Shown piece after piece: positions 14,301 through 64,000 of a DNA stretch of 64,000 nucleotides. The stretch is from Macrostomum hystrix. Taxonomy: Eukaryota > Animalia > Platyhelminthes. Position 1 is the first letter of the stretch. Every line of letters starts with the position of its first letter. Below the pieces are notes generated by a model. The model searched no databases, was not told the origin of the DNA, and saw only the letters and a list, made by a program, of their open reading frames with translations. Location: positions 124,001 through 188,000 of the forward strand of contig CATNEN010000028.1 of the NCBI GenBank assembly GCA_950097015.1, given 5' to 3'. Position numbers and translations under genes: made by a program.

Positions 14301-17300
14301 AACTGGCCAGGGTTGCGGGCTCCGCCCCGGCCGTTGCCGTTTCCCGACGGCTTCTTGCAGTTTCTGGCGAGGTGGCCGCGTTGGTTGCAGTTCCAGCAGG
14401 TTACCTCGCGCTGTCTCCTCGCACTGCGAACCGCGCAGGAGTCGGAAGCCTCCGAGCCCAGCTTCGCTGCCAGGTCTTGGACCGTCGCCTGCAGTGAGCT
14501 GACCGCGGCCCTCAGATCTGCGGTCTCGGTGCTGCCGCAAGTAGTTCCGGCTGCCGCCGCGAGGGGCGGCCGGCTTCCATCCGTGGTGGCAGAAGGCAGC
14601 TCCAGTAGCAGTTGTGCCCGCGCAAGGGCGTCGCTTACCGTCTTGACTGACGCGTCGGCTCTGATTTGCCTGCTGACATCCGCTGGCAGTCCGCGGATGA
14701 AGTGATGGGTCAGCATGGTGTCTGTGGCGTTCTTGTTGCTAACGCCAGCGTCCTTGAGCAGCTGCTTCAGGTGATAGAGAAACAGACGAGGAGGCTCCCC
14801 AGGCAGCAGCTTCCGGCTCTCAAATGCCTCCAGCGCTAAGAAGTGCTGGCTTTCTGGGTGAAATGCCTCGGTCAGTGCATGGGTAACCTGACTGTAGTCG
14901 CTCTTATCCTTGTCACCGAGCTCAAGGAAGACCGCCAGAGCCCCACCATCCAGAAACGTTGGCAGATGCAAGTGCTTATCATTTGTCCACTTGTTGGCTG
15001 CCGCACACAGCTCAAACCGCTGCAGCCACTCCTTAAAGTTTCCAGAGCTAAAAGTTCTCGGAATCGCGCGATGACTGCCCTCTGCCATTCTGAGCTCTGC
15101 TACCACTTGTAACACGCGGTGTTTGGCGGTGTGAAACCAGATTCTACGAAGGCCCCGTGAGGCCGTGCTTGTTGTATTTATGTCAGTTGCGATTACGTAA
15201 TCAGCGATGTACAGTAATGAACGATGTTAAACGAACGAACAGCAAATACGATAGAATGATTCAGCAAATTATTAGAAAGATTGTTAACATTCAAAAACTG
15301 CCTCAAAGGCTAGGAATAAAAACCATTACAAACGGAACACATGTACCAGAAACACATCTGTGACGCTCATTCAACGGAACACATTTACCAGAAACACATC
15401 TGTGACGCTCATTCAATGGAACACATGTACCAGAAACACATCTATGACGCTCATTCAACGGAACACATGTACCAGAAACACATCTGTGACGCTCATTCAA
15501 CGGAACACATGTACCTGACACACATGAGTGTTTTCTCCGTGACTTAAATTAACTATGACTTAGTGCAATGTGTACCGACCTTCTTACGCTTGCCCTCGTC
15601 GTTAAGCAGAAAGGCAGCTACATAAGGAGTGAAAATCGCCGTGTAGATGACCAGCACAAGGATGAACCAGTCCCATACAGCCTTGAATGGCGAATAGTGC
15701 AGTATAGTGCAGCTGTGCACACTAGGTGACTGCAGCTTGTACTCTGGCAGAGCTTCCGAGCCCAGCGACAACATCTGGAACGCCAGGTATTCAGCCTCAC
15801 ATAAAATATGAAACGAACATTCCAAATTCACATCAACCGACATGCTTTCAAGATAGACACATCAGCTGTCATGCCGTTTATGATATCAATTATTTGATAT
15901 CTCGTGACGCATGCAATTGCATATGAACAGAAGAATTAAAGTCAATTTAGCGCTCCGCAGACTCAACACCAATTGCTTTTGAGAAGTTTCAAATCAAGAG
16001 AAAAGAGACAGTCAATCAAGGCAGTTTTGTCCTGCAGGCACTGAGAACTTACGCGATCAAATTCATTTTCGTAGTCGATTTCGTTCTGCCAAATCTGATA
16101 TTCGTTTGATCGTTCCAGTTATATGCATATCTTTTTGGATCTGAACAAGATGGAGCTTGATTTGAGCTTGATATAAACTCTGGGAAATAACCAAGTTGCC
16201 AAGTTTGGCAACACAGTTTTTTACTATGTTCCGATTGGCTATTCGAGTCGAAATAGCCTCAGCCATCCCAGTGCAAAACTCACATGAGCCACCCGCTCAG
16301 TGACATTGTGACGCAAAGGAGTTGCTGTAGGCGAGAAGCTGACGCTCTGATGTCTATGGCTAAAAGTGCCCACAGCGGAGCCCGAATTTGCGGGCACAAA
16401 TAGGCGCCCGGACTCCATCGATTTCGCTTCAAAGCTGTGCCGTCTCGAGCGAAAAATGTTTTCCACTTCACCTGCAAAATCAGCGATTGGTGGCGATACA
16501 GTCATAGCCAGCCATTGCTAATCATTCATCACTTTGTCATGGTACTCACCTGCGTCATCGAATCTCGCCGACAAGTCTAAACCTTCGAAGCTGGGGCTCA
16601 GCGATAGCAGGCTCTCCGCGCACTGATCATTCGGCATCAGCGGGATCAAGCCTCCGCCGTTTCCGCCACCGCCGTTGCCGCCGCCGGCCCCTCCACCGAC
16701 TCTACCCAGTGCACTGCCGACCGATCCAAAAATAGCCTCATTGGCGCCTCCAAGAATGGGCACCGTCGTGGCTACGTCTGAGGACGCCGCCATCGTTGAG
16801 AAGAAGCCGCCGCTACCGCTGCCACCAGTGATTCCGTCAGTGCCGAACGAGTCGTCCCGACGGAGATGCATCCCGGCTAGAGCCGCGCGAACCATGCCGC
16901 GGAAGGTGTCGCCAAGGCCCAGACTCCCTGGGAGAATGGGCATCGAGTTTTGATGATGGCAACTGTCACTATACACACTGGCACAATGTCCTTATCTTGC
17001 TGGCTTCAAAGCGGCAACTGCAGAAGCTTCGAAGGAGAGCTTTTGCTCCATCGGTCAGAGCTTTGGTGTATGCTTGAGCCAAGGACACTGCTACATTTTA
17101 TATTATGGCAGCCTTGGTAGTTTTACATAACACTGTACATTCAAAACTATGTCCGTTGCAAATATGCCGTATGTTTGTTTCTGATTTCCTTGTTTGGATT
17201 AGTTTTTTTTGTTTGGTAGTGCCATATGTTAGTACAGTATGTACTTTAGTTTCTTGTGTCTGCTTCATTGCGGCAGCCCGCCCTCTGCTGTTGTCTATGG

Positions 17301-31656: not shown

Positions 31657-34600
31657 TCGAAGGCTTCTTCATCAAACTCTTCAAAGCGGCGCTGCCTTCA
31701 TTCCGTTGGGCCATGCGGTCCGAATCTCATCAGGCAGACCATCGATGAATTGTCTGCTGCCAGCTTTGAAGAGCCTCCCGACTCGCCCTCCGACATGGAG
31801 CTGGCTTCGTTCAGAATGATTCCTGACATTGACGATTTGAATAACAATCAGCACTCGGAAACTAAGGTTGAAGAGGAGGAGGAAACGGCTGCTCAAAATC
31901 ATCTAAAACCCCGGCCCCTGATTGGAACGTGGTTGATGCCAGACGTTGGCCAATATTTTAATTTTCCGAGAAAGTGTGAAAAAGAAAAGGCTTTTGGAGG
32001 CAACAGTGATAGGGCTTGTGGCCCGGACACTTTATTCAAGTGGCGCTTACAAGGCCTTACATTCGAGGATGCTGTGCAGGTGAGGAACTGCTAGTCTGTG
32101 ATAGTGCAGGTGAGGAACTGCTAGTCTGTGATAGTGCAGGTGAGGAACTGCTAGTCTGTGATAGTGCAGGTGAGGAACTGCTAGTCTGTGATAGTGCAGG
32201 TGAGGAACTGCTAGCCTGTGATAGTGCAGGTGAGGAACTGCTAGCCTGTGATAGTGCAGGTGAGGAACTGCTAGTCTGTGATAGTGCAGGTGAGGAACTG
32301 CTAGTCTGTGATAGTGCAGGTGAGGAACTGCTAGTCTGTGATAGTGCAGGTGAGGAACTGCTAGCCTGTGATAGTGCAGGTGAGGAACTGCTAGCCTGTG
32401 ATAGTGCAGGTGAGGAACTGCTAGCCTGTGATAGTGCAGGTGAGGAACTGCTAGCCTGTGATAGTGCAGGTGAGGAACTGCTAGTCTGTGATAGTGCAGG
32501 TGAGGAACTGCTAGTCTGTGATAGTGCAGGTGAGGAACTGCTAGTCTGTGATAGTGCAGGTGAGGAACTGCTAGCCTGTGATAGTGCAGGTGAGGAACTG
32601 CTAGCCTGTGATAGTGCAGGTGAGGAACTGCTAGTCTGTGATAGTGCAGGTGAGGAACTGCTAGTCTGTGATAGTGCAGGTGAGGAACTGCTAGTCTGTG
32701 ATAGTGCAGGTGAGGAACTGCTAGCCTGTGATAGTGCAGGTGAGGAACTGCTAGCCTGTGATAGTGCAGGTGAGGAACTGCTAGCCTGTGATAGTGCAGG
32801 TGAGGAACTGCTAGCCTGTGATAGTGCTGGTGTATTCTGAACTGCTAGCCTGTGATAGTGCTGGTGTATTCTGAACTGCTAGCCTGTGATAGTGCTGTTG
32901 TATTCTGAACTGCCAGCCTGTGATAGTGCTGGTGTATTCTGAACTGCTGTGAACGTATTGTTGAATCTCGCTCGCTCTGACAGGAGAGTCACCGACGACC
33001 CTTTGGCGGCGTGCTGTGCCACTACCGCAGCTGGAGATTTCCCGACAGGCAAAGAAGTTCCACAGCTGGTGCTGCTGTGTACCCAGATGGGCCACCTAGC
33101 AACCATTCTACTCGCGACTCGGAGGTAGTAGCAGAGGCAGCAGCAGTGTCTCCCGCGCCTTCGTCGACTCCTGCTGGCGGTCCAGCTCAATCAGACTGCT
33201 CAGAAGGTTTGTCGCGTGCTACTGATGACTGTGGCCAGTTCAGTTTGGCAGCATTCCTGTGCGCGCCAGGCCAGCAGAGCGAGGAGCCTAGCCTTTGCTT
33301 GATCAGCGACGAAGATTTGGACGCTGAACTCGGGCGCGAGGAACAGGCGACCAGAATGCAACAGCGGTCTGAATCGCCTATTAGATTTACTGCAACTGCT
33401 TCTGGGGCTGCAGATTCTCAGCCGAGTCAGCAGCGAGACCAGCCTCGGTGTCAACAATCACGATCTGAGTCGCCTCAACAGCCGGCTCAGCCACATCAAC
33501 AGCCCGCTGAGCCACCTCAACAGGCGGCTCAGCCGCCTCAACAGCCGGCTCAGCCACCTCAACAGCAATCACAGCTACGGCAGCAGCAATCACAGCCACA
33601 GAACCGGCAATTACAGCTTCAGCAACAGCAATCACAGCCTCAGCAGCAGCAGTCACGGCCACAGCAGCAGCAATCACAGCTACAGCAGGAGCAATCACAG
33701 CAACAGCAATCACAGCTACAGCAGCAGCAATCACAGCAACAGCAATCACAGCTACAGCAACAGCAATCACAGCTACAGCAGCAGCAATCACAGCAACAGC
33801 AATCACAGCTACGGCAGCAGCAATCACAGCAACAGCAATCACAGCTACAGCAGCAGCAATCACAGCAACAGCAATCACAGCTACAGCAACAGCAATCACA
33901 GCTACGGCAGCAGCAATCACAGCTACAGCAACAGCAATCACAGCCACAGCCGCAGCAATCACAGCTACGGCAGCAGCAATCACAGCCACAGCAGCAGCAA
34001 TCACGGCCACAGCAGCAGCAATCACAGCTACAGCAGCAGCGATCACAGCCATGGCAGCAAACACAGCTACAGCAACAGCAATCACAGCCACAGACGCATC
34101 AATCACGGCCACAACAGCAGCAATCACAGCTACAGCAGCTGCAATCACAGCCATGGCAGCAGCCATCACAGCTACAGCAGCTGCTATCACAGCCATGGCA
34201 GCAGCCATCACAGCTACAGCAGCTGCAATCACAGCCACAGCAATCACAGCCGCAGCAGCAGCCATCACAGCTGTTGCTGCACCAGCGACCACAGACAATG
34301 GAACAGGTAGTGCAGCGTCTAACACTAGCGAAGCAGCAGCAAGGGCTGGAGCAGGGGAGGCAGCTGGTACAGTTGCCTAGGGCACAGGAGCAGCAACAGC
34401 AGCAGCATATTCTGCTTCAACACTCAGATGCGGATGGCGGCTCTCAGCAACAGCTAGGATGCGGGCCCAATCCGATTTATGTCTGTCTAGCCTGCAACGA
34501 GACTCTTCAGGATTCCGTCGCCGCCACAGAACACTCGTCACCGTCCAATCTCATGCACTACTGTCTGGCACTGCCAGAGCCCAGTTCCAGTTTGGCTGAT

Positions 34601-35413
34601 TACAAATTGACTTGCCACACCTGCGATTTCGGCTTTAACAGCGGCCTGTCTATCGGCCCGCTTGCCGCCTTGGTTATTCACTGCCTGTCCGAGCATCGGG
34701 CTGCTATCTCTGGGCCGCTGCTCAACTTGCATCACACAGCCTCAGGTCAGCGTTGGCGACTTAGCGGCAACCGCAACACTCGCTGCCAGCTGTATAAGAA
34801 GGCCTGCGACACCTGGCTAGCCAACGTGCCAGCGCTCAATGTCTACGACTTTGTCCTGGCGCCATCAGCCTCCTCAAATCATAATCTGCGCTCGCCATTC
34901 GCGTTAGCCTTTGTTCTAATTTGTCGTTTCTGTCGCAGAATCAGCATACCGACCGCTTGGAGCTTGCCGCAGTGCCCGGAGCTCATATCCACACTGCGGC
35001 CGCACCCCAGCGGTCATCCCTGCCAACTAGTGATGGTTGCTGTGCGGTTGCTAGGCTCGCCTACGGCTAATAGACAATTCGGCTGTGCAGTTGCCAACTG
35101 TCCAATTCGGTCAGCTAGCCCACAGGCCTGCGCCATTCATCAGCTGGCTCTCCACGGTGTGTCCAGCTCTCTTCGCTGCGCTAAGTGCAGTTTTCACTCG
35201 GATTCCGTGTCCACCGGCCTACTGCATTATCGACTGTGCCGCAGCACGGCCCGACAGTATCTCATAGCCTGTGTTAGCCTGGCTCACTCGGTGCCTAACA
35301 ACTGCCTGCAGCAACAGCCTCAGCCTCAGCCTCTGATGCTATCTAGCCAATGCCTGCTGAGCCTAATGCCTGATGGCAACACTGTCGGACTGCGGTTCCT
35401 CTTTGATCGCTGA
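31657..35413 (+). CDS. Uncharacterised Gln-rich protein with multiple degenerate C2H2-like zinc-finger motifs; exons 31657-32079 and 32984-35413 (start codon not located)
   Basis: Phase-0 GT-AG intron 32080-32983 joins two open frames (..TFEDAVQ|ESHRRPFGG..). Long polyQ/QS tract, then CLAC, CHTC..HCLSEH, CRFC, CAVANC..HQLALH and CAKC..HYRLC. Confidence 0.72.
32074..32950 (+). repeat. 30-bp minisatellite (GTGCAGGTGAGGAACTGCTAGYCTGTGATA) x25 plus about 4 variant units
   Basis: The first unit overlaps the exon end and donor site. Confidence 0.97.
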
Positions 35414-54793: not shown

Positions 54794-56944
54794 ATGGATC
54801 AGTTTCGAGCTTCGCTTTCAACAAATGAGCTGCATTATCTAGCCAGCCACAACACTAAGCCCTACCGCCTATTCAAACAGGACAGACTGTTTGCCGAGAA
54901 AGCAGGTAAGACAGTTGAGCGCCAGCTGAAAGCGGAATGGGCCTCGTTGGACCTGTCTGCCAAGCTGTTCTATTGCCAACGGGCCGACTGTTTCCCGGAC
55001 AGGAAGAAGCTAGAATTCATTAGGCAATGCCGGTTTCACCCGGCCACCATTTCATCAACTGCCACCAACTACGATCTGGACTTTGAACAGCAACCAACTG
55101 AGGTAAGGCTGAATTATCTTCACAGATCCTCTGGCTGAATAGTCTTCCCAGACCTCAGGATTAACAGTCCTCACATATCCTCATTCTGATCAATCTTCCC
55201 AGATCCTCATTCTGATCAATCTTCCCAGATCTTCATTCTGAACAATCTTCCCAGATCCTCATTCTGAACAGTCTTTCTAGATCCTCATTCTGAACAGTCT
55301 TCCCGGATCCTCATTCTGAACAGTCTTCCCAGATCCTCAGGATGAAAAGACTTCACAGATCCTCATTCTGAATAGTCTTCCCAGATCCTCAGAATGAAAA
55401 GTCTTCCCAGATCCTCATTATGAACAGTCTCCCCATATCCTCAGGCTAATCAGTATTCCCAGATTCCATTCTGAGCATACTTCCCAGATCCTCAGGCTGA
55501 GTAATCCTGAGGCCTAGACCTATCTCTTCTTATTCTTATGTTGGGAACAATTTTACAGCAGCAGCAGCACAAGCAGCAACCAACAGGGCTATCTTCATCA
55601 GCAGCGGCCAGCAGAGCTCCTAGCATTGCTACATCTTCAGCGGCTACGACTGCCACAGCTTCTGCCGGCCCAGCCGTTGCTGCGGCCACTCCAGCGGGCA
55701 TTGCTCGCTATCAGCCTATTCGTCCGCGCCTCCTGCCGCCATTCCAGACTCTGCTGCCTCGCCGCGTTCGCCAAGAGCCTCCAGCTGCCGCGGCTGGCAG
55801 TCCGGCAGCCAGCAATTCGATTGACGACTCCGTGCAGCTTGTTGGCATCGAGTATCCGTCACTGGCTAAGCGGCCTCGCATCCAGGCTTCCGTCCCTCCG
55901 AGCCTTGCGACGCCAACGCCATCGTCGCTTTCGCTGTCAGTTTCGTCGGCTTCAACTCCGTCGTCTGGCGGCTCAGCTGGCTTTTCGAATCGGCCACAGG
56001 CGCCTCAGCAGTTGCAGCCAATCGCATTGTCTCTGCCACTGCCGCAGCCGTCGCCTACAGCGGATTACATCAGAGGCGTTCAGTATGGCAGCGCCTATGC
56101 CAATCCGACGGCTGCGATCGAGATTTCGCCTCCGCAGCATCAGCAGCGGCAGCAGCAAGCGTCAGAAAGCGCCGCCGCTGCATACAATTCTTATTGGCAG
56201 TTTTACTATTCGGCCTATTGCTCCAGTCAGCAGCCGCCACCGCCGCCTCCAGTCTACCACAGTCAGCTGCGATATCAGCCCAGCTTTCAGCTGCCGCAAT
56301 ATCAGTATCAGCAGCAGCAGCAGCGTCAGGTGGCCTACGCCAATCCAGCCTCTTATTTCGTAGGTCGACGCGATGCTTCTTCGCAGTTTCCTTCCTTGAC
56401 GTCTCCGCCACCGCCGCCGCCGCCCCAGCCTCAGGCGCCGCCTCCTCTGCAGTCGTCGATGTCGTCCTGCTACTCGCCGGACATATTTCTATTCGACGAG
56501 CAGCTTCATCACCAGGTGTCAACGATGTCACCGTCGGCCTCGGCCCTAGTGACTGAGCACTACCACCAGCACCAGCATCAGCAGCAGCAGCAGTCTTTCG
56601 CTTTTAGTTCAGGCATTTACGGCAGCACTTGCGATAATTATTTTATTGGCTGCGGCTACGGCTACGCCGACGCCAGCGGAGGCAACGGCTACAATTGCGT
56701 CGGTGGGGTCGGCGACGTCGCCGGCTGTTTAGATGCCGGATCACTCATTGACGCCGCTGAAACCAGCGACTGCCGTCTGTCAACGCCAGAATGTCCGACT
56801 GCGGCCAGCGACTGCCAGGATGTGAAGCTGGAGGAGGGAAGCGATGACACAGACAGCGAGGATGATGACAATGAAGACGATGAGCTAGACGGAGAGGATG
56901 AGGACGTTCAGAAAGAGATTGTCGGTAATCGTCTCAGTAGTTGA
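54794..56944 (+). CDS. Protein with divergent N-terminal HMG-box-like domain, Pro/Gln/Ser-rich body and acidic tail; exons 54794-55102 and 55559-56944
   Basis: KPYRLFKQDR..LKAEWASLDLSAKLFYCQRA resembles HMG-box helices. Phase-0 GAG|gtaagg ... ttttacag|CAG joins the two ORFs in frame. Confidence 0.55.
55130..55500. repeat. About 26-bp degenerate minisatellite (TCTTCCCAGATCCTCATTCTGAACAG) filling the intron
   Basis: About 13 degenerate units. Confidence 0.88.
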
Positions 56945-58029
56945 AATCGCCAAATATGAGAATAAGGACTGGAAGGCTGGTGATGCTGTTTCTGAAGTGT
57001 TTCTGATTATTTTCCGACAAATCGTCTAGCCAAACCATATTCTGTTTTGTTCTCTATACAGTCTGTTATATACTCGTAATACTATTTTCTGTGTCGCTCA
57101 GCCGTATGCCTCATTTGTGCATTAAATACCGTCATTGAATTTTTGCATTTTTCTAGCTTTTTGTTCTTTCTACGTTTTCAAATTAGACAGTTTTACAAAG
57201 AAGGTGGCAAATACTTTCTAAACTTGCTCAAGGTTGCCTTCTAAAATAGCATTAATATTTTTTTCTATATATTTTTTCACCTGCTAGGCTTCATAATATT
57301 CCGTTCTGTTGGCTATGCTTGTTTTGTTTTGCGTTTTCGTTACTCATATTGTGCGATAGGCACTATTTTTTTTCACTTTTCGCTATCAACACTGCTCACC
57401 TATAACAATTCTTTCTCTTTTAAAGAGAAAGATCAGAACAGACACTTTCAATCAGAATCCAACACTGTCCATCAGAATCCAACACTGTCCATCAGAATCC
57501 AACACACACTGTCAATCAGAATCCAGTAGACACTTTCAGTTTGTCTCTAGTTTCTTCCAGATAATCTCACGGGTTGTTTGCCTCATTTTTTGCCAGAATG
57601 TGCTTTTGATGTCGGTAGTATTTGTTTTGTATTGTACCTCTGTGTGCTCTTTAGAAAGTCCCACACCTATCATGCGCCAGCCTTTCATTTCGAGTGTGTA
57701 CTTTTAATGAATAATATGGTGTACTTACATGCATATGTTGATTACTGATGTCCCAGTTATGTGTCGCAGTGGTTTTTCGTATTTGGCCATGAAAAGCATG
57801 TTGCTTTCTCAGTTTTCACACATTCTCAGTTTTATCTTTTGGTGAGGTGCTACACAACTTTTTCATATTATGGAAAAGCTAGCAAAACTATTAAATCTCT
57901 TTTTACGTAGCTTTATTATCAAAAAATGTTCCTTACACATTTTTCTAATCCTTCACAATCTTTCAGTTGCAGAAATATATATTTCAAATATAATCATTGT
58001 TTTTTAAACTAAAGTTTTTATGTTTAAAA

Positions 58030-58310
58030 ATGCATCAACAGCTGACACTGCAGTGTTACAGTTAAGTCCTCCAATTCCATCAACAGCTGACATCCCATTT
58101 TCATTAACAGCTGACATTCCAATTCCATCAACAGCTGACATCTGAATTCCATCAACAGCTGACATCCCAATTTCATCAACAGCTGACATCCCCATTCCAC
58201 CAACAGCTGACATCCCCATTCCACCAACAGTTGACATCCCCATTCCACCAACAGCTGACATTCCCATTCCACCAACAACTGACATCTGAATTCCACCAAC
58301 AGCTGATACA
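58030..58310. repeat. 24-bp minisatellite (CAACAGCTGACATCCCCATTCCAC)
   Basis: About 10 units upstream of METTL26. Confidence 0.9.
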
Positions 58311-58452
58311 TTTCAACTTGATTTATACTAGCTTTGTCTACCCTGGACCCCTTGTTGTATTGCAGCCACTATTAGCTAACTTATTAGCTGTTACCTGGCG
58401 AGTTCTGTCATTTTCTACTAGAAGCAGCAGCGGCAGAGGCAGAGTTAGAAAA

Positions 58453-59055
58453 ATGATTGCGCCAGCAGCGGAGCGCAACAAGGAGGCAATCCTGGCCATC
58501 ATGCGGCAGTATATACCCTCTGGCACTTGTCGCCTATTAGAGATTGCCTCTGGCACTGGGCAGCACTGCGCCCACCTGGCAGCTAACCTGGCAAATCGCG
58601 GCCTTCAACTTCAACCCTCCGACATTGATGACAGCAGTTTTGCCAGCATCGAGGCGCACTGCTCCGGCCTGCCCAATATCCGCCTGCCGCCGCTGCAGCT
58701 GGACATTGCTAAGACACCCTGCCAGATGCCGCCGTTCGGCCAGCCAGACATAGTGTTCTGCGCCAACATGATCCACATCAGCTCCACAGCTGCTGTTGAA
58801 GGCCTGTTTGTCAACTCTGGCAGACTGTTGGCCAGCGGCGGCCGCCTCATCACCTACGGTCCCTACGCCATCGATGGACAGATTTATCCGCAGAGCAATA
58901 TTGACTTTGACCAGTCGCTGCGATCCCGCAATCCGGACTGGGGCCTGAGAGACACAGCCTACCTTGCTGGCCTGGCTGAGACTCGGGGACTGAGGCTGGC
59001 TAATAGGCATCAGATGCCCGCCAATAACTGGATGCTTGTTTTCGACAGGCTGTGA
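58453..59055 (+). CDS. METTL26: Methyltransferase-like 26 (DUF938), single coding exon, 200 aa
   Basis: APAAERNKEAIL; LEIASGTGQH; QPSD; NMIHIS; LITYGPY; SNIDFDQSLRSRNPDWGLRD; MPANNWMLVF. Confidence 0.93.
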   Translation: MIAPAAERNKEAILAIMRQYIPSGTCRLLEIASGTGQHCAHLAANLANRGLQLQPSDIDDSSFASIEAHCSGLPNIRLPPLQLDIAKTPCQMPPFGQPDIVFCANMIHISSTAAVEGLFVNSGRLLASGGRLITYGPYAIDGQIYPQSNIDFDQSLRSRNPDWGLRDTAYLAGLAETRGLRLANRHQMPANNWMLVFDRL

Positions 59056-59337
59056 CATGAAACAGTCTACTAATTAGACAATCATCACTACTTGTATCAG
59101 TAGCTAGGGGTGCAGTGGTAAAGCTCAGAGGTCACATTAGTTTGCGCCGATGAGGCTTTAAAGCTTGTGCTGCAATTTAGACCCACGAGAGGCCAACCTC
59201 CAAAAGCATTAATAGTAGAAAGAGGACGCTATTTTCCCTTGGGAAAAAATCGCGGGGATACTTTAAATACCCGCTGCAATGACCGCTTATCGTATCGTGA
59301 AATTGATAAAAAAACTTATTTCATGGCTCAAAGCACG

Positions 59338-60489
59338 TTACAAGTAGATAGAACACTTAACCCCGTTTTTCTCTAGGACAATCGTGGGTTCTCTGGCCAC
59401 CATGTCGCTTGCCTGCAATGTCTCATCCTGCTCTGCAGTGATCCGCTTAGCGGGAGTTGCCTCTTCTAGCGTGCTGGTGCTTCCGTGCAAGCCAGAAGTC
59501 ATGGACGTTGACAGTAGACGCTTTTGATCCAGTGACACTCGCTTGGTGTACCGGATCACGTTCTCCAGTCTCTTGTGCCCCGAGACGGCCTGAATTTGCT
59601 CCGCACTGAAGCCTTGCTCCGACAGGGTAGTGATTGTAGTAACACGAATGCAGTGATTGGTGTACGACCGACCGAGACCAGCTTCCTGGGAGAGAACTTT
59701 CATAAATCCGGCGAGCGTGTTCTTACCCAAGACCTCCTTCTTGCAGAACCAGTCGCCGCCCGTCCAGTTGGTCCTCTGTCTTGGGAACAGGTTCGGGTTG
59801 TCGCTAGTAAGCTCTCTAGGTAGAGAGTAAATGCCTCAACGGGGCATGCGGCCTTATTGCTCACGGGAAAGATACCGATTTCCTTCCTGGTGCTGGCACT
59901 CTTGGCGGAAACATTCTTCTCCTTCTTCTCCTTCACTAAATCGATATATTCGACATGTCCGTCGCGTCGCTTCACTATAACGTCATTTTTGATCAAAGCT
60001 CGGATCCACTCCCGACCTCTAAATCCAAAGTGGAACACGATGAGAAACAGCACCTCATACTGGAGCCTCTTCGGATCTGCTCTGGTGAAGTACGCGTGCA
60101 GCTTAGACATGTCCTCACTGTCTATTGCCGGATATCCGGCCTCACCGTAAACAACAGACGTCGGTTGCTTCAGCGAGTACGTTACGGCAGCTTTGAAGGT
60201 CTTATCCAGCTCAAAAAAATCCGATCCTGGTCTGCTTCTCGGTAGATCGCACAGCGCAATCGTTCTCCAATTTCGAAATCTCTTGTACGTCGCTCTCGCT
60301 TAACTCCGGATAATCTGACAATCCCAGCATAAACTGCTCGACGAAGCTTGCGTCGAGAGTCACGAGTCCGGTGAATTGAGATATCGCAGTATCTCCGGAG
60401 CGGTTGACCGATTCATCAGTGACGAAGCGCAATTCATCAGTGGACAAGCCCACAATCTCGCCTTCCACTATTCCGTCGTAGTTGATCAT
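59338..60489 (-). pseudogene. Crypton-type tyrosine recombinase copy 1 (internal deletion plus frameshift)
   Basis: FGFRGREW (catalytic R), CPVEAF.LYL, NLFPR..VLGKNTLAGFM, YTNHCIR, SGHK, IRY. The frame breaks near 60225 (segment missing after STEKQT) and near 59805. Confidence 0.85.
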
Positions 60490-61130
60490 GGCTCAGTGGA
60501 AGTTTGAAGGAAAGAAATTCCTGAGCTAGCCTTAGTTTTCCTTTCCCTCCTCAACTTGTTCAGACTTCGTGCAGTTGTAGTCTATGGCATAGCTTATCAC
60601 GCACCAAGAGGGAGAGAAAGAAATGAGAGAGATACTGAAAATAGAATAAAGGTCCGCTGAGTGGTGGAAAGGAGAGAGAAACAAGGCTCAGCGTATTTGA
60701 CTTTCTAGTAAAATAGTCGACGGCGCCCTCTGATTTTCCATTAACGCCCTTAAAGCATGGGTACTAATGGTATATTGACAGTTATTGTACTCATTCTAAG
60801 CCAGGAACGCCTAGTCTATGGTTTAAAGTGCTATAATTCCAGGACCGAAATGAAAGCAGTTTGAACTATAGACTAAACAGAACTAAACAGTGTATTTAAG
60901 TGCAACAAAAATAACTATTATTGTCACATTCTTTCTCTTATTATTTCTCGTTGTGTAATTTTGTGATTATCAAACGCCAACTTTTCAACATCTACCATAG
61001 ACTATGGTGGAACTGCGAGTTTATTTTTCATATCAACGAGAAATCAGCTTCAATGGTTAAGCAATGAACAGTTTACAGTTTTTAGTTGTTTATAGTTGCA
61101 ATTCTCAATGACGCAGATGTCTCTAACCAT

Positions 61131-62603
61131 TCAAGTGCAGCCAGAGAAATGACAATCCGTGAAGATAGTTGAGACGTTCTGCCTACTAAGTGTAATGTTC
61201 TGGTTACTCACGTCCATCGTGCTTGACGATCCAGCGTTAGATGGCTGATCAGTCCTAACCAATTCTGTGTTCGTACGAGAATCACTTGATTGCAAAGCTT
61301 CCCCCACAGTCGTAGCCATGTCTCGCAGCGTGTGGTCACGTTTCCTCGATAGATACCGCCGAACTGTCGACTCAGATTGATGTCCCGTGATATTCATGAT
61401 GTCGGACAGAGTATAGCCAGCTTCGTGTAGATCAGCCGTCCTAGTTACTCGAATGCAATGGTTCGTATACTTTTTGCTGAGCTCACACAGGGTGCTTAAT
61501 CGAGTCATGAACGATCCTAACCAATTGATCCCACGAACCTGCTTAGTTGAAAACTGCAGCTGTCCTTCTTTATTTGCCATCGGTCTTGGAAAAAACGAAT
61601 TGTCCTTGGTTTCGTTGGGCAGGACTTGAAGGTAGGTCTCAATGAGTTCATACTGACCGCCATAGATTCTCGCTTGCTTTGGGTTGAAACCTTTGGCCTT
61701 GACTGGATTGGCACTCTGGTTCTTGGTTCTGAGGTTAGGTAGCTCGTAATACTTCTTGCCGTCGCCGTCTTCTTTTTCTACGAGTATGTCTCTCTGACGA
61801 AGGTGTTGGAGGTGCTCTTGACCGCGCTCTCCCAAGACATACAATAAAGTGTAAATCACTTCATCCTGTAGTCGTTCTCCAGTCGAGCGATCAAAGTAAC
61901 TGGACAACTTGGTTAGATCGGCGCGCTCTATCGGTTCGTAACGCTTCACGCTCCCGCCTTTAGAATGAAAATCCCGCACCTTAACTCGAAGCATGCGATT
62001 GGCAGTAGCAAATTTAGGATCATCGACGATGTTGAGTTCACGCTTGATAATGAAGTGAAAAAATCGCTGGATGCCGGCCCGAATGCAGACCAAGCTAGAT
62101 GGCGAGTACGACTCTCCATTCGGTTTAGAAAGCCGAAAGTAGTAGAACCGCAGGTGCTCGTTGAGGCTACTGGGCTCCATTGTTTTGAGACTTTCAACAG
62201 GATGACCCAAGTCACTCATGTAGCTGGCAAACTCTTTGCCATAAAGGAACATTTGCTCCTTGGTCGATCTTGGTAGAGAATCCACCTCGGCCTTGTCCAT
62301 GACATCAGTAGCAACAGAAGCTCCATCCTCTTCACATTCCGGCAGATCGACACCAAGCAGTTCATCGTCAGATCGTGAATGATCGGTAATGAAGTTAATA
62401 AAGTCCTCCAGCTGATTGTCATCTCGGTGATTGTCACTGCTCAGCTCCGCAATGAATGAGTATTCGCTGGATGAAACGCCATCGAGACTATCAACCGGCA
62501 GATGAGACCAATTGATAAGATGCGTAGCGGTCATGTTTAAGGCAGGCAAGCGAAGACGGCTTAAAATGAAAAACGGAGAAGTCTTCGCTGTAACTTCGAA
62601 CAT
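61131..62603 (-). CDS. Intact Crypton-type (DUF3504/lambda-integrase fold) tyrosine recombinase, 490 aa
   Basis: KPNGESYSPSSLVCIRAGIQRF; GERGQE (R), TKN (K), YTNHCIR (HxxR), TGH, RRY (Y); C-terminal FTDCHFSGCT. Single uninterrupted ORF. Confidence 0.9.
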   Translation of the reverse strand: MFEVTAKTSPFFILSRLRLPALNMTATHLINWSHLPVDSLDGVSSSEYSFIAELSSDNHRDDNQLEDFINFITDHSRSDDELLGVDLPECEEDGASVATDVMDKAEVDSLPRSTKEQMFLYGKEFASYMSDLGHPVESLKTMEPSSLNEHLRFYYFRLSKPNGESYSPSSLVCIRAGIQRFFHFIIKRELNIVDDPKFATANRMLRVKVRDFHSKGGSVKRYEPIERADLTKLSSYFDRSTGERLQDEVIYTLLYVLGERGQEHLQHLRQRDILVEKEDGDGKKYYELPNLRTKNQSANPVKAKGFNPKQARIYGGQYELIETYLQVLPNETKDNSFFPRPMANKEGQLQFSTKQVRGINWLGSFMTRLSTLCELSKKYTNHCIRVTRTADLHEAGYTLSDIMNITGHQSESTVRRYLSRKRDHTLRDMATTVGEALQSSDSRTNTELVRTDQPSNAGSSSTMDVSNQNITLSRQNVSTIFTDCHFSGCT

Positions 62604-62727
62604 TTAAGACCAAAGTTTCTGACGAATTACCATAGATGGTATCTAAATTTAGTCATGCATTATCAACCGTTTGATAATGAAAGATTATTAAACGCCTATT
62701 TTGTGTAGAAATCATGAGACAATAATA

Positions 62728-62827
62728 TTGTGTCTATGGTTTTAGGCTTTGATAATGCTCAAATGACACTCGTGGCTTCGCCACTCGTGACTTTGAGCAT
62801 TATCAAAGCCTAAAACCATAGACACAA
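62728..62827. repeat. 100-bp palindrome with perfect 36-bp arms
   Basis: 62728-62763 TTGTGTCTATGGTTTTAGGCTTTGATAATGCTCAAA is the exact reverse complement of 62792-62827; 28-bp spacer TGACACTCGTGGCTTCGCCACTCGTGAC. Confidence 0.97.
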
Positions 62828-63074
62828 CTAACCATTATATACTGTATAACGAAGCAACAAAAAGACTTTTTTCTAGCCAAACTACAGACAATTGCTAGGA
62901 TTATATGGGAAACATATTTAGTTTGTCTCAATAATAGGCAGTGCATTAAGCGTTTCACAAACTCACTTAAACTGAATTTCGATTTTAGCTCGATCAATGA
63001 TGATAGACTTGACACCGTGGTCAGTAATAGAATAGTAATCTCCAGAAGCGACAGGCTCACTTACATGCATGCCT

Positions 63075-63560
63075 GGATTAGCCTCAGCTACAGGAGACGT
63101 ACCCTGTAAAACATTAGAAGCGAATCTAGCCACCTTTGCAGACGGACCGATGTATCGTTCTATGGCAGCTGAACTGTGTCCAGTAATTTTCGCGATTTCG
63201 GGCCTGGACTTGCCCTCGTCACGCAGCGTTGTGACGCAAGTCTTTGAGCGACTGATTGCTGTACTTCCTACTTTTTGGCTCCGGCAGACTCACCGTGACG
63301 GTGCGCACAACTGAATCGATAGTGTGGCGTCCTAGTACCTGATTCTGATACCACTTCCCAGTTCGAAAAGATGCAGGATTCCGGTACCAGGCCAAAAAGA
63401 GTTGCGGCTTTGTGCATTCGGCCGGGCGGAGGCTGACGTAGCGCTTGTACAAGCAAACAAGACAGCGATTGTGTCCTGGTGTATGATACACCGTGTTCCC
63501 TTGAACGGGGCTTTGCCCCGACACTCCCGAAGGCTGCACCGCATTCGGCGCGGCTCAAGA
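63075..63560 (-). pseudogene. Crypton-type tyrosine recombinase copy 3 (C-terminal fragment, frameshifted)
   Basis: RCLVCLYKRYVSLRP..LFL..WYQNQVLGRHTI..KYSNQSLK, then after a frameshift near 63240 TCVTTLRDEG..EIAKITGHSSAAIERY. Confidence 0.8.
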
Positions 63561-63659
63561 GAAAGCTACAAAAATAAGCAATTCGGATTTTATATAAGAT
63601 CACGGTAGTTTAATGCGCATTCTATGGTAAAAAGTCCTCGGCCACACTTAATGGTCCTC

Positions 63660-63795
63660 GGCTCGCTTCGCATACATGCTCGCATAATTCTATACGCAGT
63701 TGCAATCGGCACTTGCAGGATGGCTGCTGCGGCATTTAGTGTTGCCCATTGCACTATAATAGCAGACACCAAGCGTTGCCTGTCGACTGAGGATA
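63660..63795 (-). pseudogene. Possible Tc1/IS630-like transposase N-terminal HTH fragment
   Basis: SSVDRQRLVSAII..ATLNAAAAILQVPIATAYRIMR resembles Tc1-type HTH starts; short and unconfirmed. Confidence 0.35.
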
Positions 63796-64000
63796 TTGGT
63801 GGAGGGAATTTGAAAAACAGCAACAAGAAATAGCAAAGATAAGAAAGAATCGAAAGAAAACCAAACAGGCAGATCAAAGTTTAATCATTTTGGTTGTCTC
63901 TAGTCTATGGTTGAAAGGGTGAATTTTTTCTGAGTGTCTGAATTCATTCTCGCTTTGAATGCCCCTTTCTCGTTTTGGTTGTCCAAACGTCTATGTTCTC

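What the first reader, a model, noticed from the sequence alone, without database searches (positions are those of the whole stretch)
59338..63911. Three divergent Crypton-type tyrosine recombinase genes in tandem, punctuated by a shared CCATAGAC/GTCTATGG motif
Three clearly different YR genes (two decayed, one intact) lie in the same orientation within 4.6 kb. The motif recurs at 60578 (TAGTCTATGG), 60812 (TAGTCTATGGT), 60994 (palindromic ACCATAGACTATGGT), 62629 (ACCATAGATGGT), 62732/62816 (palindrome arms) and 63901 (TAGTCTATGGT), at the boundaries between the genes and not within them. Cryptons are established YR DNA transposons thought to move via circles without TSDs. Inference: unrelated YR elements share a recombination site and integrate into one another's ends, building a cassette-like array reminiscent of an integron in an animal genome. 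I recall similar words at the ends of Crypton-type repeats, but could not verify this.
Basis: partly seen in the sequence, partly recalled or inferred. Interest (0 to 1): 0.8.

Follow-up and report, generated by a model that had tools for sequence, protein, structure and literature searches.

The report
Nested Crypton transposons with end hairpins
Three tyrosine-recombinase ("Crypton") jumping genes lie head to tail in a flatworm genome, one of them inserted in the tail of another; the repeated word GTCTATGG sits inside their ends and hairpins and is not the seam, and the intact copy shows an end structure that gives animal Cryptons a testable docking site.

Summary
Three different tyrosine-recombinase (YR) genes lie on the minus strand: one intact (490 aa, Cre-like fold, full catalytic set) and two decayed. 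GTCTATGG/CCATAGAC occurs 6 times in 4.6 kb (about 0.23 expected), only in non-coding DNA.

The integron reading does not hold. These are three multi-copy Crypton-type transposons, each with its own YR gene and no cargo. Element 2 (60920-62837) is inserted, co-oriented, in the 3' part of element 3. A relative's contig joins 60907-60919 directly to 62834 onward (an empty site), and the insert is flanked by an 8/10 direct repeat, TAATGGTTAG/TAATAGTTAT. That repeat is the seam. The motif lies 75-95 nt inside the ends and at the base of a 100-nt hairpin.

The new part is the end anatomy: short direct repeat, hairpin with a GCGNAGC mini-hairpin apex and tandem G.A mismatches, inverted repeat, YR gene, inverted repeat. 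It recurs in seven families (Macrostomum lignano and environmental assemblies). In the four families with both ends defined, joining the ends makes one long palindrome. The papers I read report no terminal repeats for animal Cryptons.

Other agents of this scan noted the same motif, hairpins and co-oriented arrays elsewhere in this genome. Mobility through circles and YR binding to these sites are inferred, not shown.

The parts
59321..60718 (-). Element 1: a decayed Crypton copy holding the gene 1 remnants (59338-60489). The left (3') edge is at 59321. The 5' side breaks off at 60718 inside a TAGTC|TATGGT motif.
   Evidence: The single-copy contig ends at 59350 and the repeat contig starts at 59321, with depth 419-727 against 72 for single-copy DNA. 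Other copies read TATGGTAGTGGGTGGG after 60718 (loose ends). YR homology comes from tblastn and Pfam PF00589 at 32.7 bits. The nearest full-length relative found is P0044, 47% identical.
60719..60782 (.). A 64-nt unassigned repeat fragment between element 1 and the 3' end of element 3.
   Evidence: Many contigs of other copies start or stop at 60722-60730 and 60773-60780. Depth in the 60722-60915 bin is 2214 in X1 and 1313 in X12.
60783..60919 (-). The 3' terminal piece of element 3, cut off from the rest by the insertion of element 2. It ends in an IR-R-like terminus (reverse complement of 60783-60795: GAATGAGTACAAT). It also holds a decayed foldback at 60812-60875 with TAGTCTATGG / CTATAGACTA at its outer ends.
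   Evidence: The terminus resembles that of element 2 (AGAATGTGACAAT). A contig of organism C joins AAAAAAACTGTT, which matches 60907-60919 at 11 of 13, directly to 62834 onward (loose end at 62834). The foldback is inverted repeat I2.
60911..60920 (-). Direct repeat, copy at the 3' junction of element 2 (minus strand TAATAGTTAT).
   Evidence: It is 8/10 identical to 62828-62837 (read). The position agrees with the empty-site contig.
60920..62837 (-). Element 2: a complete Crypton-type transposon of 1918 nt with an intact YR gene.
   Evidence: L001, a 99.3% identical copy, diverges at 60919/60920. Contigs of three runs start exactly at 60920. Depth is about 444 against 72 for single-copy DNA. 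A deletion derivative joins 61230 to 62460. The empty site is seen at 60919|62834.
60920..60936 (-). IR-R, the 3' terminal inverted repeat (plus strand ATTGTCACATTCTTTCT).
   Evidence: It pairs with 62707-62727 (I5, 86% over 21 nt). Both ends are aligned.
60966..61008 (.). 3' subterminal sites: ATTATCAAACG (60966-60976) and the palindrome ACCATAGACTATGGT (60994-61008).
   Evidence: The same two words, in the same order read inward, occur at the 5' end. They lie inside the copy shared with L001.
61131..62603 (-). Gene 2: an intact 490-aa tyrosine recombinase.
   Evidence: AlphaFold2 model with mean pLDDT 74 and a core above 90. The best structural matches are Cre recombinase over both domains, E 4e-9, TM 0.65-0.69 by target. 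R260, K294, H382, R385 and Y417 are invariant or nearly so in 28 relatives. Relatives include M. lignano 'Tyr recombinase domain-containing' proteins.
62629..62678 (.). 5' subterminal sites: ACCATAGATGGT (62629-62640; ACCATAGACGGT in L001) and the palindromic pair around CGTTTGATAAT (62657-62679).
62707..62726 (-). IR-L, the internal partner of IR-R, directly 3' of the hairpin in gene orientation.
   Evidence: (I5). The same layout is seen in six other families.
62728..62827 (-). The 5' hairpin of element 2. It has 36-nt perfect arms whose bases are GTCTATGG / CCATAGAC. On the gene's sense strand the apex reads GTCACGAGTGGCGAAGCCACGAGTG. That is a GCGAAGC mini-hairpin between two CACGAGTG words, which pair with a tandem G.A mismatch.
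   Evidence: I1. The DNA fold is -47 kcal/mol, z -17. It is 80% identical to M. lignano L003:9609-9719 in the same position and polarity, with three compensatory arm changes. The mini-hairpin consensus GCGNAGC/GCGNNAGC is from PMC13037366.
62828..62837 (-). Direct repeat, copy at the 5' end of element 2 (minus strand TAATGGTTAG).
   Evidence: Homology with L003 stops about 10 nt beyond the hairpin. The empty-site contig begins its match at 62834.
62838..63671 (-). The body of element 3: a 3' non-coding part (62838-62962), the gene 3 C-terminal fragment (62963-63539), and a half hairpin (63617-63671). The half hairpin starts at TTCTATGGT and is cut right at its GCTTCGC apex.
   Evidence: Pfam DUF3504. 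Translation. Other copies complete the hairpin after 63671, and a deletion derivative joins 63031 to 63557. GCGAAGC lies on the minus strand at 63665.
63676..63975 (.). Another moderately repeated sequence, carrying TAGTCTATGGT at 63901-63911. It is unresolved because it lies at the window edge.
   Evidence: Depth is 1067-2149 in X1, and seven contigs start at 63676. The 95-aa ORF at 63590-63877 has no family match.

Best explanation
This locus is a small pile-up of three Crypton-type (CryptonA-like, DUF3504/QRICH1-related) tyrosine-recombinase DNA transposons from three families, just downstream of a DUF938 host gene in a Macrostomum-like flatworm.

Shown. Each element is multi-copy with its own deletion derivatives. 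Element 2 is complete and inserted, in the same orientation, into the 3' non-coding part of element 3. It is flanked by an imperfect 10-bp direct repeat, and a paralogous empty site exists. Its anatomy is: direct repeat, 100-nt hairpin, inverted repeat IR-L, 5' subterminal sites, YR gene, 3' subterminal sites, inverted repeat IR-R, direct repeat. The same anatomy recurs in seven families.

Inferred. The element leaves as a circle. In the circle IR-R meets the hairpin and IR-L, making one palindrome of about 140-170 nt whose centre is the GCGNAGC mini-hairpin. The recombinase exchanges strands in the short asymmetric stretch between IR-R and the 5' arm of the hairpin (TAATGGTTAG in element 2), with a target that shares microhomology. 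GTCTATGG(T) and ATTATCAAACG are recombinase or accessory binding words inside the ends and the hairpin stem. They are not the crossover point. Resident elements carry the same words and AT-rich TAAT-like targets, and the crossover region is asymmetric. Circles therefore tend to land in or beside resident ends in a fixed orientation, which builds co-oriented arrays that then decay.
For: YR identity.

Multi-copy state and boundaries. The repeat contigs start at 60920, depth is about 6 times single copy, and deletion derivatives join 59411 to 60430, 61230 to 62460, and 63031 to 63557.

Empty site and direct repeat: (loose end at 62834 reading AAAAAAACTGTT, matching 60907-60919) and the sequence.

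Inverted repeats of 17-23 nt bounding units of 1.81-1.87 kb in six families. Three P0015 copies diverge exactly after ...ATATACAAT.

A hairpin just 5' of IR-L in seven families, z -7 to -21. Each has a GCGNAGC or GCGNNAGC apex flanked by GA/GA 2x2 loops.

L024 and L025 share the hairpin and diverge 10 nt upstream of it and right after the 3' IR. This gives a CAATG terminal direct repeat.

Joining the ends extends the hairpin stem through IR-R and IR-L in four families.

The motif is subterminal and symmetric at both ends. TCTATG lies 36-45 nt from the hairpin centre in four families.

Co-oriented neighbours elsewhere: a second YR gene start 160 nt after the first element in L026, and a 3'-end-like remnant just upstream of the element in L024.
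Against: No circle junction, excision footprint or transcript was observed, and no RNA run is on record.

The empty site rests on one contig of a related organism with only 12 unmatched letters.

The X1 contig of element 2 stops at 62728, at the first base of the hairpin arm, not at 62757 as a palindrome alone would cause. So at least some copies differ at or in the hairpin. L001 and an organism-B contig diverge at 62672-62675, so a second 5'-end variant exists.

Elements 1 and 3 show no clear inverted repeats in this window, and the 5' side of element 1 is unresolved.

The exact apex also occurs in 18 metagenome contigs, in hairpins with unrelated arms and no YR gene nearby. Hairpins therefore also live on their own.

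Apex polarity is not universal. It is flipped in L032/L033 and L035.

L004 has 250 nt upstream of its gene and no clear hairpin.

The 8/10 direct repeat is only modestly significant (about 0.01-0.02 after allowing for register).
Confidence: 0.7

Rival explanations
1. This is an integron-like cassette array in which unrelated YR units are joined at a shared CCATAG/CTATGG crossover site.
For: The motif is strongly enriched and confined to intergenic DNA. The units are co-oriented. Hairpins with motif-bearing bases recall attC sites. In other copies of element 1 the break at 60718 lies inside an intact TAGTCTATGGT.
Against: The mapped seam of element 2 is a TAAT(G/A)GTTA(G/T) repeat, not the motif. 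The motif copies lie 75-95 nt inside the ends and are carried along in other copies. Element 2 is nested in element 3 and was not added at one end of an array. There is no cargo gene, no platform integrase and no attI. Every unit encodes its own YR, and two of them are dead.
Confidence: 0.07
2. This is a passive transposon graveyard. The three copies are neighbours only because the genome is repeat-rich and this intergenic spot tolerates insertions. There is no end-directed targeting.
For: Two of the three are decayed. Other short repeats are interleaved at 60719-60782 and 63676-63975. Three genes on one strand has a 1 in 4 chance. The window also holds a Ty3-type retroelement.
Against: Co-oriented YR neighbours also occur in unrelated assemblies (L026; L024). 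Other agents report several more such arrays in this genome (leads only). Element 2 landed 137 nt from the 3' end of element 3, at a site resembling its own junction sequence.
Confidence: 0.15
3. The hairpin is not part of the Crypton. It is an independent foldback/MITE family that the Cryptons use as a landing site, or that lands beside them.
For: Eighteen metagenome contigs carry the exact apex in hairpins without a YR gene. The X1 contig of element 2 ends at the hairpin's first base. The hairpin's own outer ends read ATTGTGTC...GACACAA, like element termini.
Against: In the window the hairpin is absent together with element 2 from the empty site. L024 and L025 share the hairpin and diverge only upstream of it. 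The hairpin lies directly 5' of IR-L in seven families, with arms that differ between families but an apex design that is kept. The joined ends continue its stem. Solo hairpins can be non-autonomous derivatives.
Confidence: 0.15
4. These are host genes (domesticated DUF3504/QRICH1-like paralogues) duplicated in tandem, not transposons.
For: DUF3504 and QRICH1 matches. Domesticated Crypton-derived genes exist in animals (PMC3212892).
Against: The three are only about 38% identical or less. Each is multi-copy with deletion derivatives and sharp repeat edges. Gene 2 keeps the full catalytic set, which domesticated copies usually lose (PMC3212892). The genes are intronless and bounded by inverted repeats.
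Confidence: 0.02

Closest known systems
CryptonA / CryptonI animal Cryptons (Kojima and Jurka 2011, PMC3212892)
   Same: A single intronless ORF encoding a YR with no C-terminal extra domain. It is related to DUF3504/QRICH1. It is multi-copy, with internally deleted non-autonomous derivatives that keep a few hundred bases of each end.
   Different: That paper found no terminal repeats, direct or inverted, in animal Cryptons. Here the elements have 17-23-nt inverted repeats, a 5' hairpin and short flanking direct repeats. Placement in the CryptonA tree with reference sequences was not done.
CryptonF / CryptonS of fungi and stramenopiles (PMC3212892)
   Same: Short (4-6 bp) terminal direct repeats are taken as the crossover microhomology. 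CryptonS elements mostly share TATGG termini, a word contained in GTCTATGG.
   Different: Here TATGG is not terminal where the seam could be mapped. The proteins belong to a different group, with no GCR1_C domain or C48 peptidase.
Glomhoppers, fungal DUF3504 CryptonA elements (PMC13465315)
   Same: An intact catalytic set in a DUF3504-type YR. Many truncated copies in repeat-rich DNA.
   Different: No flanking repeats could be detected for Glomhoppers. No hairpin is described.
Integron attC sites and the integron integrase
   Same: A YR paired with an imperfect, strand-asymmetric hairpin of about 60-140 nt. Co-oriented units.
   Different: There is no cargo, no attI and no platform gene. The hairpin belongs to a self-encoding transposon. 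Use of the hairpin as folded single-stranded DNA is untested.
Cre-loxP type core sites
   Same: The protein has the two-domain Cre fold. The joined ends give inverted binding arms around a short asymmetric spacer.
   Different: The palindrome is far longer (140-170 nt) and has a structured centre. The spacer is about 10 nt, not 8. No biochemistry has been done.
Mini-hairpin DNA GCGNAGC/GCGNNAGC at single-strand phage origins and N4 promoters (PMC13037366)
   Same: Every hairpin apex fits this consensus: GCGAAGC, GCGTAGC, GCGCAGC or GCGATAGC.
   Different: It has not been reported in a eukaryotic transposon in the papers searched. A role in priming or recognition here is conjecture.

Membership tests
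Tyrosine recombinase superfamily (Cre/Int) | Two-domain fold: a core-binding domain plus a catalytic domain | tested here: met
   The AlphaFold2 model of gene 2 has a core pLDDT above 90. Foldseek gives Cre chains over about 350 columns, E 4e-9, TM 0.65-0.69 by target.
Tyrosine recombinase superfamily (Cre/Int) | Catalytic R-K-H-x-x-R-(H/W)-Y set | tested here: met
   In gene 2, R260, K294, H382 and R385 are invariant and R416-Y417 nearly invariant across 28 relatives, and the GH at 407-408 is present. Gene 3 has Q and K in place of the H and R of HxxR.
Tyrosine recombinase superfamily (Cre/Int) | Pfam Phage_integrase (PF00589) at the gathering score | tested here: inconclusive
   Gene 2 scores 24.5 bits against a cut-off of 27.1. 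The gene 1 C-terminal piece scores 32.7 bits, above the cut-off.
Crypton DNA transposons (CryptonA-like) | The YR is the only enzyme: no reverse transcriptase and no DDE transposase | tested here: met
   Element 2 is 1918 nt with one long ORF. Relatives are 1.81-1.87 kb between the inverted repeats with one gene.
Crypton DNA transposons (CryptonA-like) | DUF3504/QRICH1-type YR sequence | tested here: met
   Gene 3 matches PF12012 at 31.9 bits, above the 29.7 cut-off. Gene 2 matches PF25561 at 24 bits, below its cut-off. Many relatives carry PF12012, PF25561 and PF00589.
Crypton DNA transposons (CryptonA-like) | Dispersed multi-copy element with signs of mobility | tested here: met
   Depth is about 6 times single copy. 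Repeat edges are sharp. A 99% copy has a different flank. Deletion derivatives exist, and one paralogous empty site was seen.
Crypton DNA transposons (CryptonA-like) | Short terminal direct repeats from microhomology, no fixed target duplication | tested here: inconclusive
   The window has an 8/10 repeat of 10 nt. L024/L025 have CAATG, L003 has TAAT and L026 has AATAATA. There are few independent insertions per family.
Crypton DNA transposons (CryptonA-like) | Lack of terminal inverted repeats (as described in PMC3212892 and PMC13465315) | tested here: not met
   Inverted repeats of 17-23 nt occur in six families. This is a difference in description, not in enzyme.
Crypton DNA transposons (CryptonA-like) | Placement inside the CryptonA clade with reference Crypton sequences | not tested
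   No Repbase or Dfam reference set was on hand.
Crypton DNA transposons (CryptonA-like) | Circular intermediate | not testable with these tools
   Only contigs could be laid. No junction joint was listed.
Integron | One platform integrase gene with an adjacent attI site and promoter | tested here: not met
   Each unit has its own YR gene. No distinct platform was found.
Integron | Cassettes made of a promoterless cargo ORF plus attC | tested here: not met
   There are no cargo ORFs. The intergenic ORFs have no family match.
Integron | Hairpin site recombined as folded single-stranded DNA | not testable with these tools
   A strand-asymmetric hairpin exists, but how it is used is unknown.
   A hairpin lies adjacent to IR-L in seven YR families. 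Solo hairpins also exist.

The most novel reading that the evidence does not exclude
The conserved hairpin is the working recombination or priming site of animal Cryptons and is used in a folded, strand-specific form. The GCGNAGC mini-hairpin and tandem G.A pairs exist on one strand only. By analogy with integron attC and CTX-phage attP, the recombinase would then act on a cruciform or single-stranded intermediate. It could invert the hairpin, which would explain the flip and flop forms seen in the P0018 family. It would also mobilise solo hairpins as non-autonomous partners. Co-oriented Crypton arrays would be the by-product of circles recombining with resident ends.
Probability: 0.25. Interest if true: 0.85.

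Novelty: new variant of a known kind. Interest (0 to 1): 0.62.

Why it matters
How Cryptons move has never been shown. For animal Cryptons the literature I could read reports no terminal repeats at all, so there has been no defined DNA substrate to test.

This locus and its relatives supply three things. The first is an intact 490-aa Cre-like recombinase. The second is exact element ends. The third is a conserved cis structure: inverted repeats, a hairpin with a mini-hairpin apex, and subterminal GTCTATGGT and ATTATCAAACG words. In the four families where both ends could be defined, joining the ends closes this structure into one palindrome.

That turns the open question of the Crypton recombination site into a direct binding and cleavage experiment. 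It also offers a simple reason why these elements pile up head to tail in flatworm genomes. It further warns annotators that such arrays are nested transposons and not integron-like gene-capture loci.

Tried and rejected
1. Self-comparison of 59200-64000 against the whole window found no other copies of any local repeat. Boundaries therefore had to come from other data.

2. I rejected it. No joint from about 61000 to about 62637 appears in four runs. The terminal bins are not deeper than the body. L001 carries the flanks at the same identity.

3. Rfam gave only sub-threshold matches of the perfect hairpin to palindromic miRNA families, which is not meaningful.

4. The exact 490-aa protein is not on record in the contig index. 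The UniRef-only M. lignano relatives have no contigs, so more M. lignano insertions could not be compared.

5. No inverted repeats were found for elements 1 and 3.

6. ORFs at 63590-63877, 62803-63060 and 60532-60684 have no family match. My first guess of a Tc1-like HTH for 63590-63877 was not supported.

7. The apex sequence is not in any paper searched. No listed paper ties Cryptons to a terminal hairpin.

8. My early claim that the GNA apex is always on the gene's sense strand was dropped. L032/L033 and L035 are flipped.

9. The TAGTC repeat at 60714 and 60812, read as a target duplication of a 93-nt insert, could be neither confirmed nor excluded.

Full report
What is in the sequence.

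The stretch 59321-63911 holds three minus-strand tyrosine-recombinase (YR) genes.
- Gene 2 (61131-62603) is an intact 490-aa ORF.
- Gene 1 (59338-60489) is in three pieces and is 38% identical to gene 2. Other copies have an extra base after 59812 and at least 239 nt at 60223 that this copy lacks.
- Gene 3 (about 62963-63539) is only the C-terminal third. It matches DUF3504 above the Pfam cut-off, has a frameshift near 63230, and reads N-Q-S-L-K where gene 2 has N-H-C-I-R.

The word GTCTATGG/CCATAGAC occurs 9 times in the window, against 1.44 expected. Six of these lie in this 4.6 kb, all in its 1389 non-coding bases. The rate outside predicts 0.23, Poisson P about 2e-7.

What the genes are.

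- The closest named relatives of gene 2 are Macrostomum lignano 'Tyr recombinase domain-containing' proteins at 50% identity. Many relatives carry PF12012 (DUF3504), PF25561 (QRICH1) and PF00589.
- A 28-sequence alignment keeps R260, K294, H382, R385 and Y417.
- The AlphaFold2 model has a core pLDDT above 90. Its best structural matches are Cre recombinase over both domains, E 4e-9, TM 0.65-0.69 by target.
- These are therefore Crypton-type YRs of the DUF3504 (CryptonA-like) kind described by Kojima and Jurka (PMC3212892). I did not place them in a tree with reference Cryptons.

They are multi-copy transposons, not host genes.

- I laid contigs of four public runs on 58200-64000. The flanking DUF938 host gene has depth 72 in run X1. 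Element 1 has 419-727 and element 2 about 444.
- The single-copy contig ends at 59350 and a repeat contig starts at 59321.
- Contigs of three runs start exactly at 60920.
- A 99.3%-identical copy from another run (L001) leaves the window's sequence at 60919/60920.
- Internally deleted derivatives exist for all three: 59411 joined to 60430, 61230 to 62460, and 63031 to 63557.

Where the seams are.

Element 2 has imperfect inverted repeats at 60920-60936 and 62707-62726 (I5). Directly beyond the second one lies a 100-nt hairpin with 36-nt perfect arms, 62728-62827 (I1). Its DNA fold is -47 kcal/mol, z -17.

One contig of organism C carries the letters AAAAAAACTGTT and then matches the window from 62834 rightwards. 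Those letters match 60907-60919 (AAAAATAACTATT) at 11 of 13. That is a paralogous empty site lacking 60920-62833. So the hairpin belongs to the inserted unit.

The insert is flanked by TAATAGTTAT (reverse complement of 60911-60920) and TAATGGTTAG (reverse complement of 62828-62837), 8 of 10 identical. So element 2 is 60920-62837, 1918 nt.

The DNA it split is 62838-62962 on one side and 60783-60919 on the other. The first follows the stop codon of gene 3. The second ends at 60783 in GAATGAGTACAAT, which closely resembles element 2's own terminus AGAATGTGACAAT. Element 2 is therefore nested, co-oriented, in the 3' part of element 3, 137 nt from that element's end.

The motif copies of element 2 lie inside these seams and are present in L001 too.
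- ACCATAGACTATGGT is at 60994-61008, 75 nt inside.
- ACCATAGATGGT is at 62629-62640, 95 nt inside IR-L.

Both ends carry the same series when read inward: inverted repeat, then ATTATCAAACG, then the CTATGGT palindrome. The motif is thus a subterminal site and forms the base of the hairpin stem. It is not the joint.

A conserved end anatomy.

In M. lignano (L003) the YR gene lies between 23-nt inverted repeats at 9723-9745 and 11547-11569 (I9). Directly 5' of them is a hairpin 80% identical to the window's. That is more conserved than the coding DNA. It has the same apex on the gene's sense strand and three compensatory changes in the arms.

More distant relatives from environmental assemblies show the same plan.
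- Inverted repeats of 17-23 nt bound 1.81-1.87 kb in the P0012, P0011, P0015 and P0044 families. Most begin TATT or ATTGT (P0012's begins CATTGC).
- Three P0015 copies diverge exactly after ...ATATACAAT.
- A strong hairpin lies just 5' of the first inverted repeat in the P0012, P0011, P0015, P0018 and P0019 families, z -7 to -21.
- Two P0012 contigs share the hairpin. They part 10 nt upstream of it and right after the 3' inverted repeat, leaving CAATG at both ends.

The arms differ between families but the apex design is kept. It is GCGAAGC, GCGTAGC, GCGCAGC or GCGATAGC on a short GC stem, flanked on both sides by GA opposite GA. These loops fit the 'mini-hairpin DNA' consensus GCGNAGC/GCGNNAGC, which melts at 70-76 C and occurs at single-strand phage origins (PMC13037366). 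TCTATG lies 36-45 nt from the hairpin centre in four families.

When the 3' end is joined to the 5' end in silico, the 3' inverted repeat pairs with the 5' one. The hairpin stem is extended in all four families tested, and a short asymmetric stretch is left at the joint.

Kojima and Jurka found no terminal repeats in animal Cryptons (PMC3212892). A 2026 paper on fungal CryptonA elements found none either (PMC13465315). No listed paper links Cryptons to a terminal hairpin.

How it most likely works.

Inferred, not shown:
- The element excises as a circle.
- The joined ends form the long palindrome that the Cre-like enzyme recognises.
- Strand exchange takes place in the roughly 10-nt asymmetric stretch next to the hairpin base, with targets that share microhomology.
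- The GTCTATGGT and ATTATCAAACG words are binding sites.

Resident copies offer the same words and similar AT-rich targets. The asymmetric crossover region fixes orientation. New insertions therefore tend to fall in or beside resident ends on the same strand.

Supporting this, an unrelated assembly (L026) has a second, diverged YR gene start 160 nt after the first element on the same strand. L024 has a 3'-end-like remnant just upstream of its element. Other agents of this scan describe several more co-oriented arrays and the same motif in this genome. I treat those as leads.

What does not fit or stays open.

- The X1 contig of element 2 ends at 62728 and not at 62757. L001 and an organism-B contig diverge at 62672-62675. 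So 5' ends vary among copies.
- The exact 23-nt apex of the window's hairpin occurs in 18 metagenome contigs, inside hairpins with unrelated arms and no YR gene. These may be non-autonomous derivatives or an independent family.
- In the P0018 family one copy's 3' arm is the exact reverse complement of another copy's 5' arm, so the hairpin exists in flip and flop forms. L035 is also flipped.
- L004 shows no clear hairpin.
- Element 1 breaks off at 60718, inside what is an intact TAGTCTATGGT in other copies. This is the one place where a break does coincide with the motif. I could not resolve what happened there.
- No RNA evidence is available.

Verdict.

The Crypton identification is confirmed. 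'Elements integrate into one another's ends' is supported for element 2 in element 3. 'The motif is the shared recombination site' and 'integron-like' are not supported.

The value of the locus lies in the defined end anatomy of an intact animal Crypton. This agrees with what other agents of this scan noted on other DNA of the same genome.

Noticed in passing
L031:1-150 versus L032/L033 (P0018 family): The hairpin exists in two configurations. The arm next to the gene in L032/L033 is the exact reverse complement of the 5' arm of L031, with TC/TT where L031's 3' arm has GA/GA. L034 matches L031. So the imperfect palindrome has been inverted between copies (flip and flop).
   Followed up: partly
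L005-L022 (18 metagenome contigs): The exact apex CACGAGTGGCGAAGCCACGAGTG sits at the centre of 115-200-nt hairpins with unrelated arms. The contigs are mostly non-coding and hold no YR gene. CACGAGTG also recurs in direct orientation within some arms.
   Followed up: partly
L026:1958-2321: A second, diverged YR gene start (LLDLNNVPGGQISG against LLDFNSIPGGMISG of P0011) lies 160 nt after the first element's 3' inverted repeat on the same strand. This is a head-to-tail pair in an unrelated sample.
   Followed up: partly
window 62672-62675: L001 starts here, and an organism-B contig of 1910 nt runs on for 393 nt unlike the window. So a second 5'-end variant of element 2 exists.
   Followed up: no
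window 60722-60915 and 63632-63825: These are the two deepest bins (about 2200 in X1, 30 times single copy). Other copies of the 60812-60875 foldback carry an extra palindromic centre, CCATCAAATGATTTGATGG, that this copy lacks.
   Followed up: partly
window 10968-15115, minus strand: A Ty3/gypsy-type retroelement: a 1190-aa pol ORF (protease, RT, RNase H, integrase) and an upstream ORF with a CCHC zinc knuckle.
   Followed up: partly
window 58231-59055, plus strand: A DUF938 / methyltransferase-like host gene (E 1.6e-63) ends 266 nt before element 1. Just upstream, 58004-58311 encodes short tandem peptide repeats on both strands.
   Followed up: no
window 33011-35413 and 55538-56944, plus strand: Long ORFs of 800 and 468 aa with no Pfam family.
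   Followed up: no
L035:618-640: TACAAT lies directly 5' of the hairpin and pairs with the ATTGTA that follows it. That is what a circle junction or a head-to-tail tandem would look like. The 3' end of this element is not in the contig.
   Followed up: no
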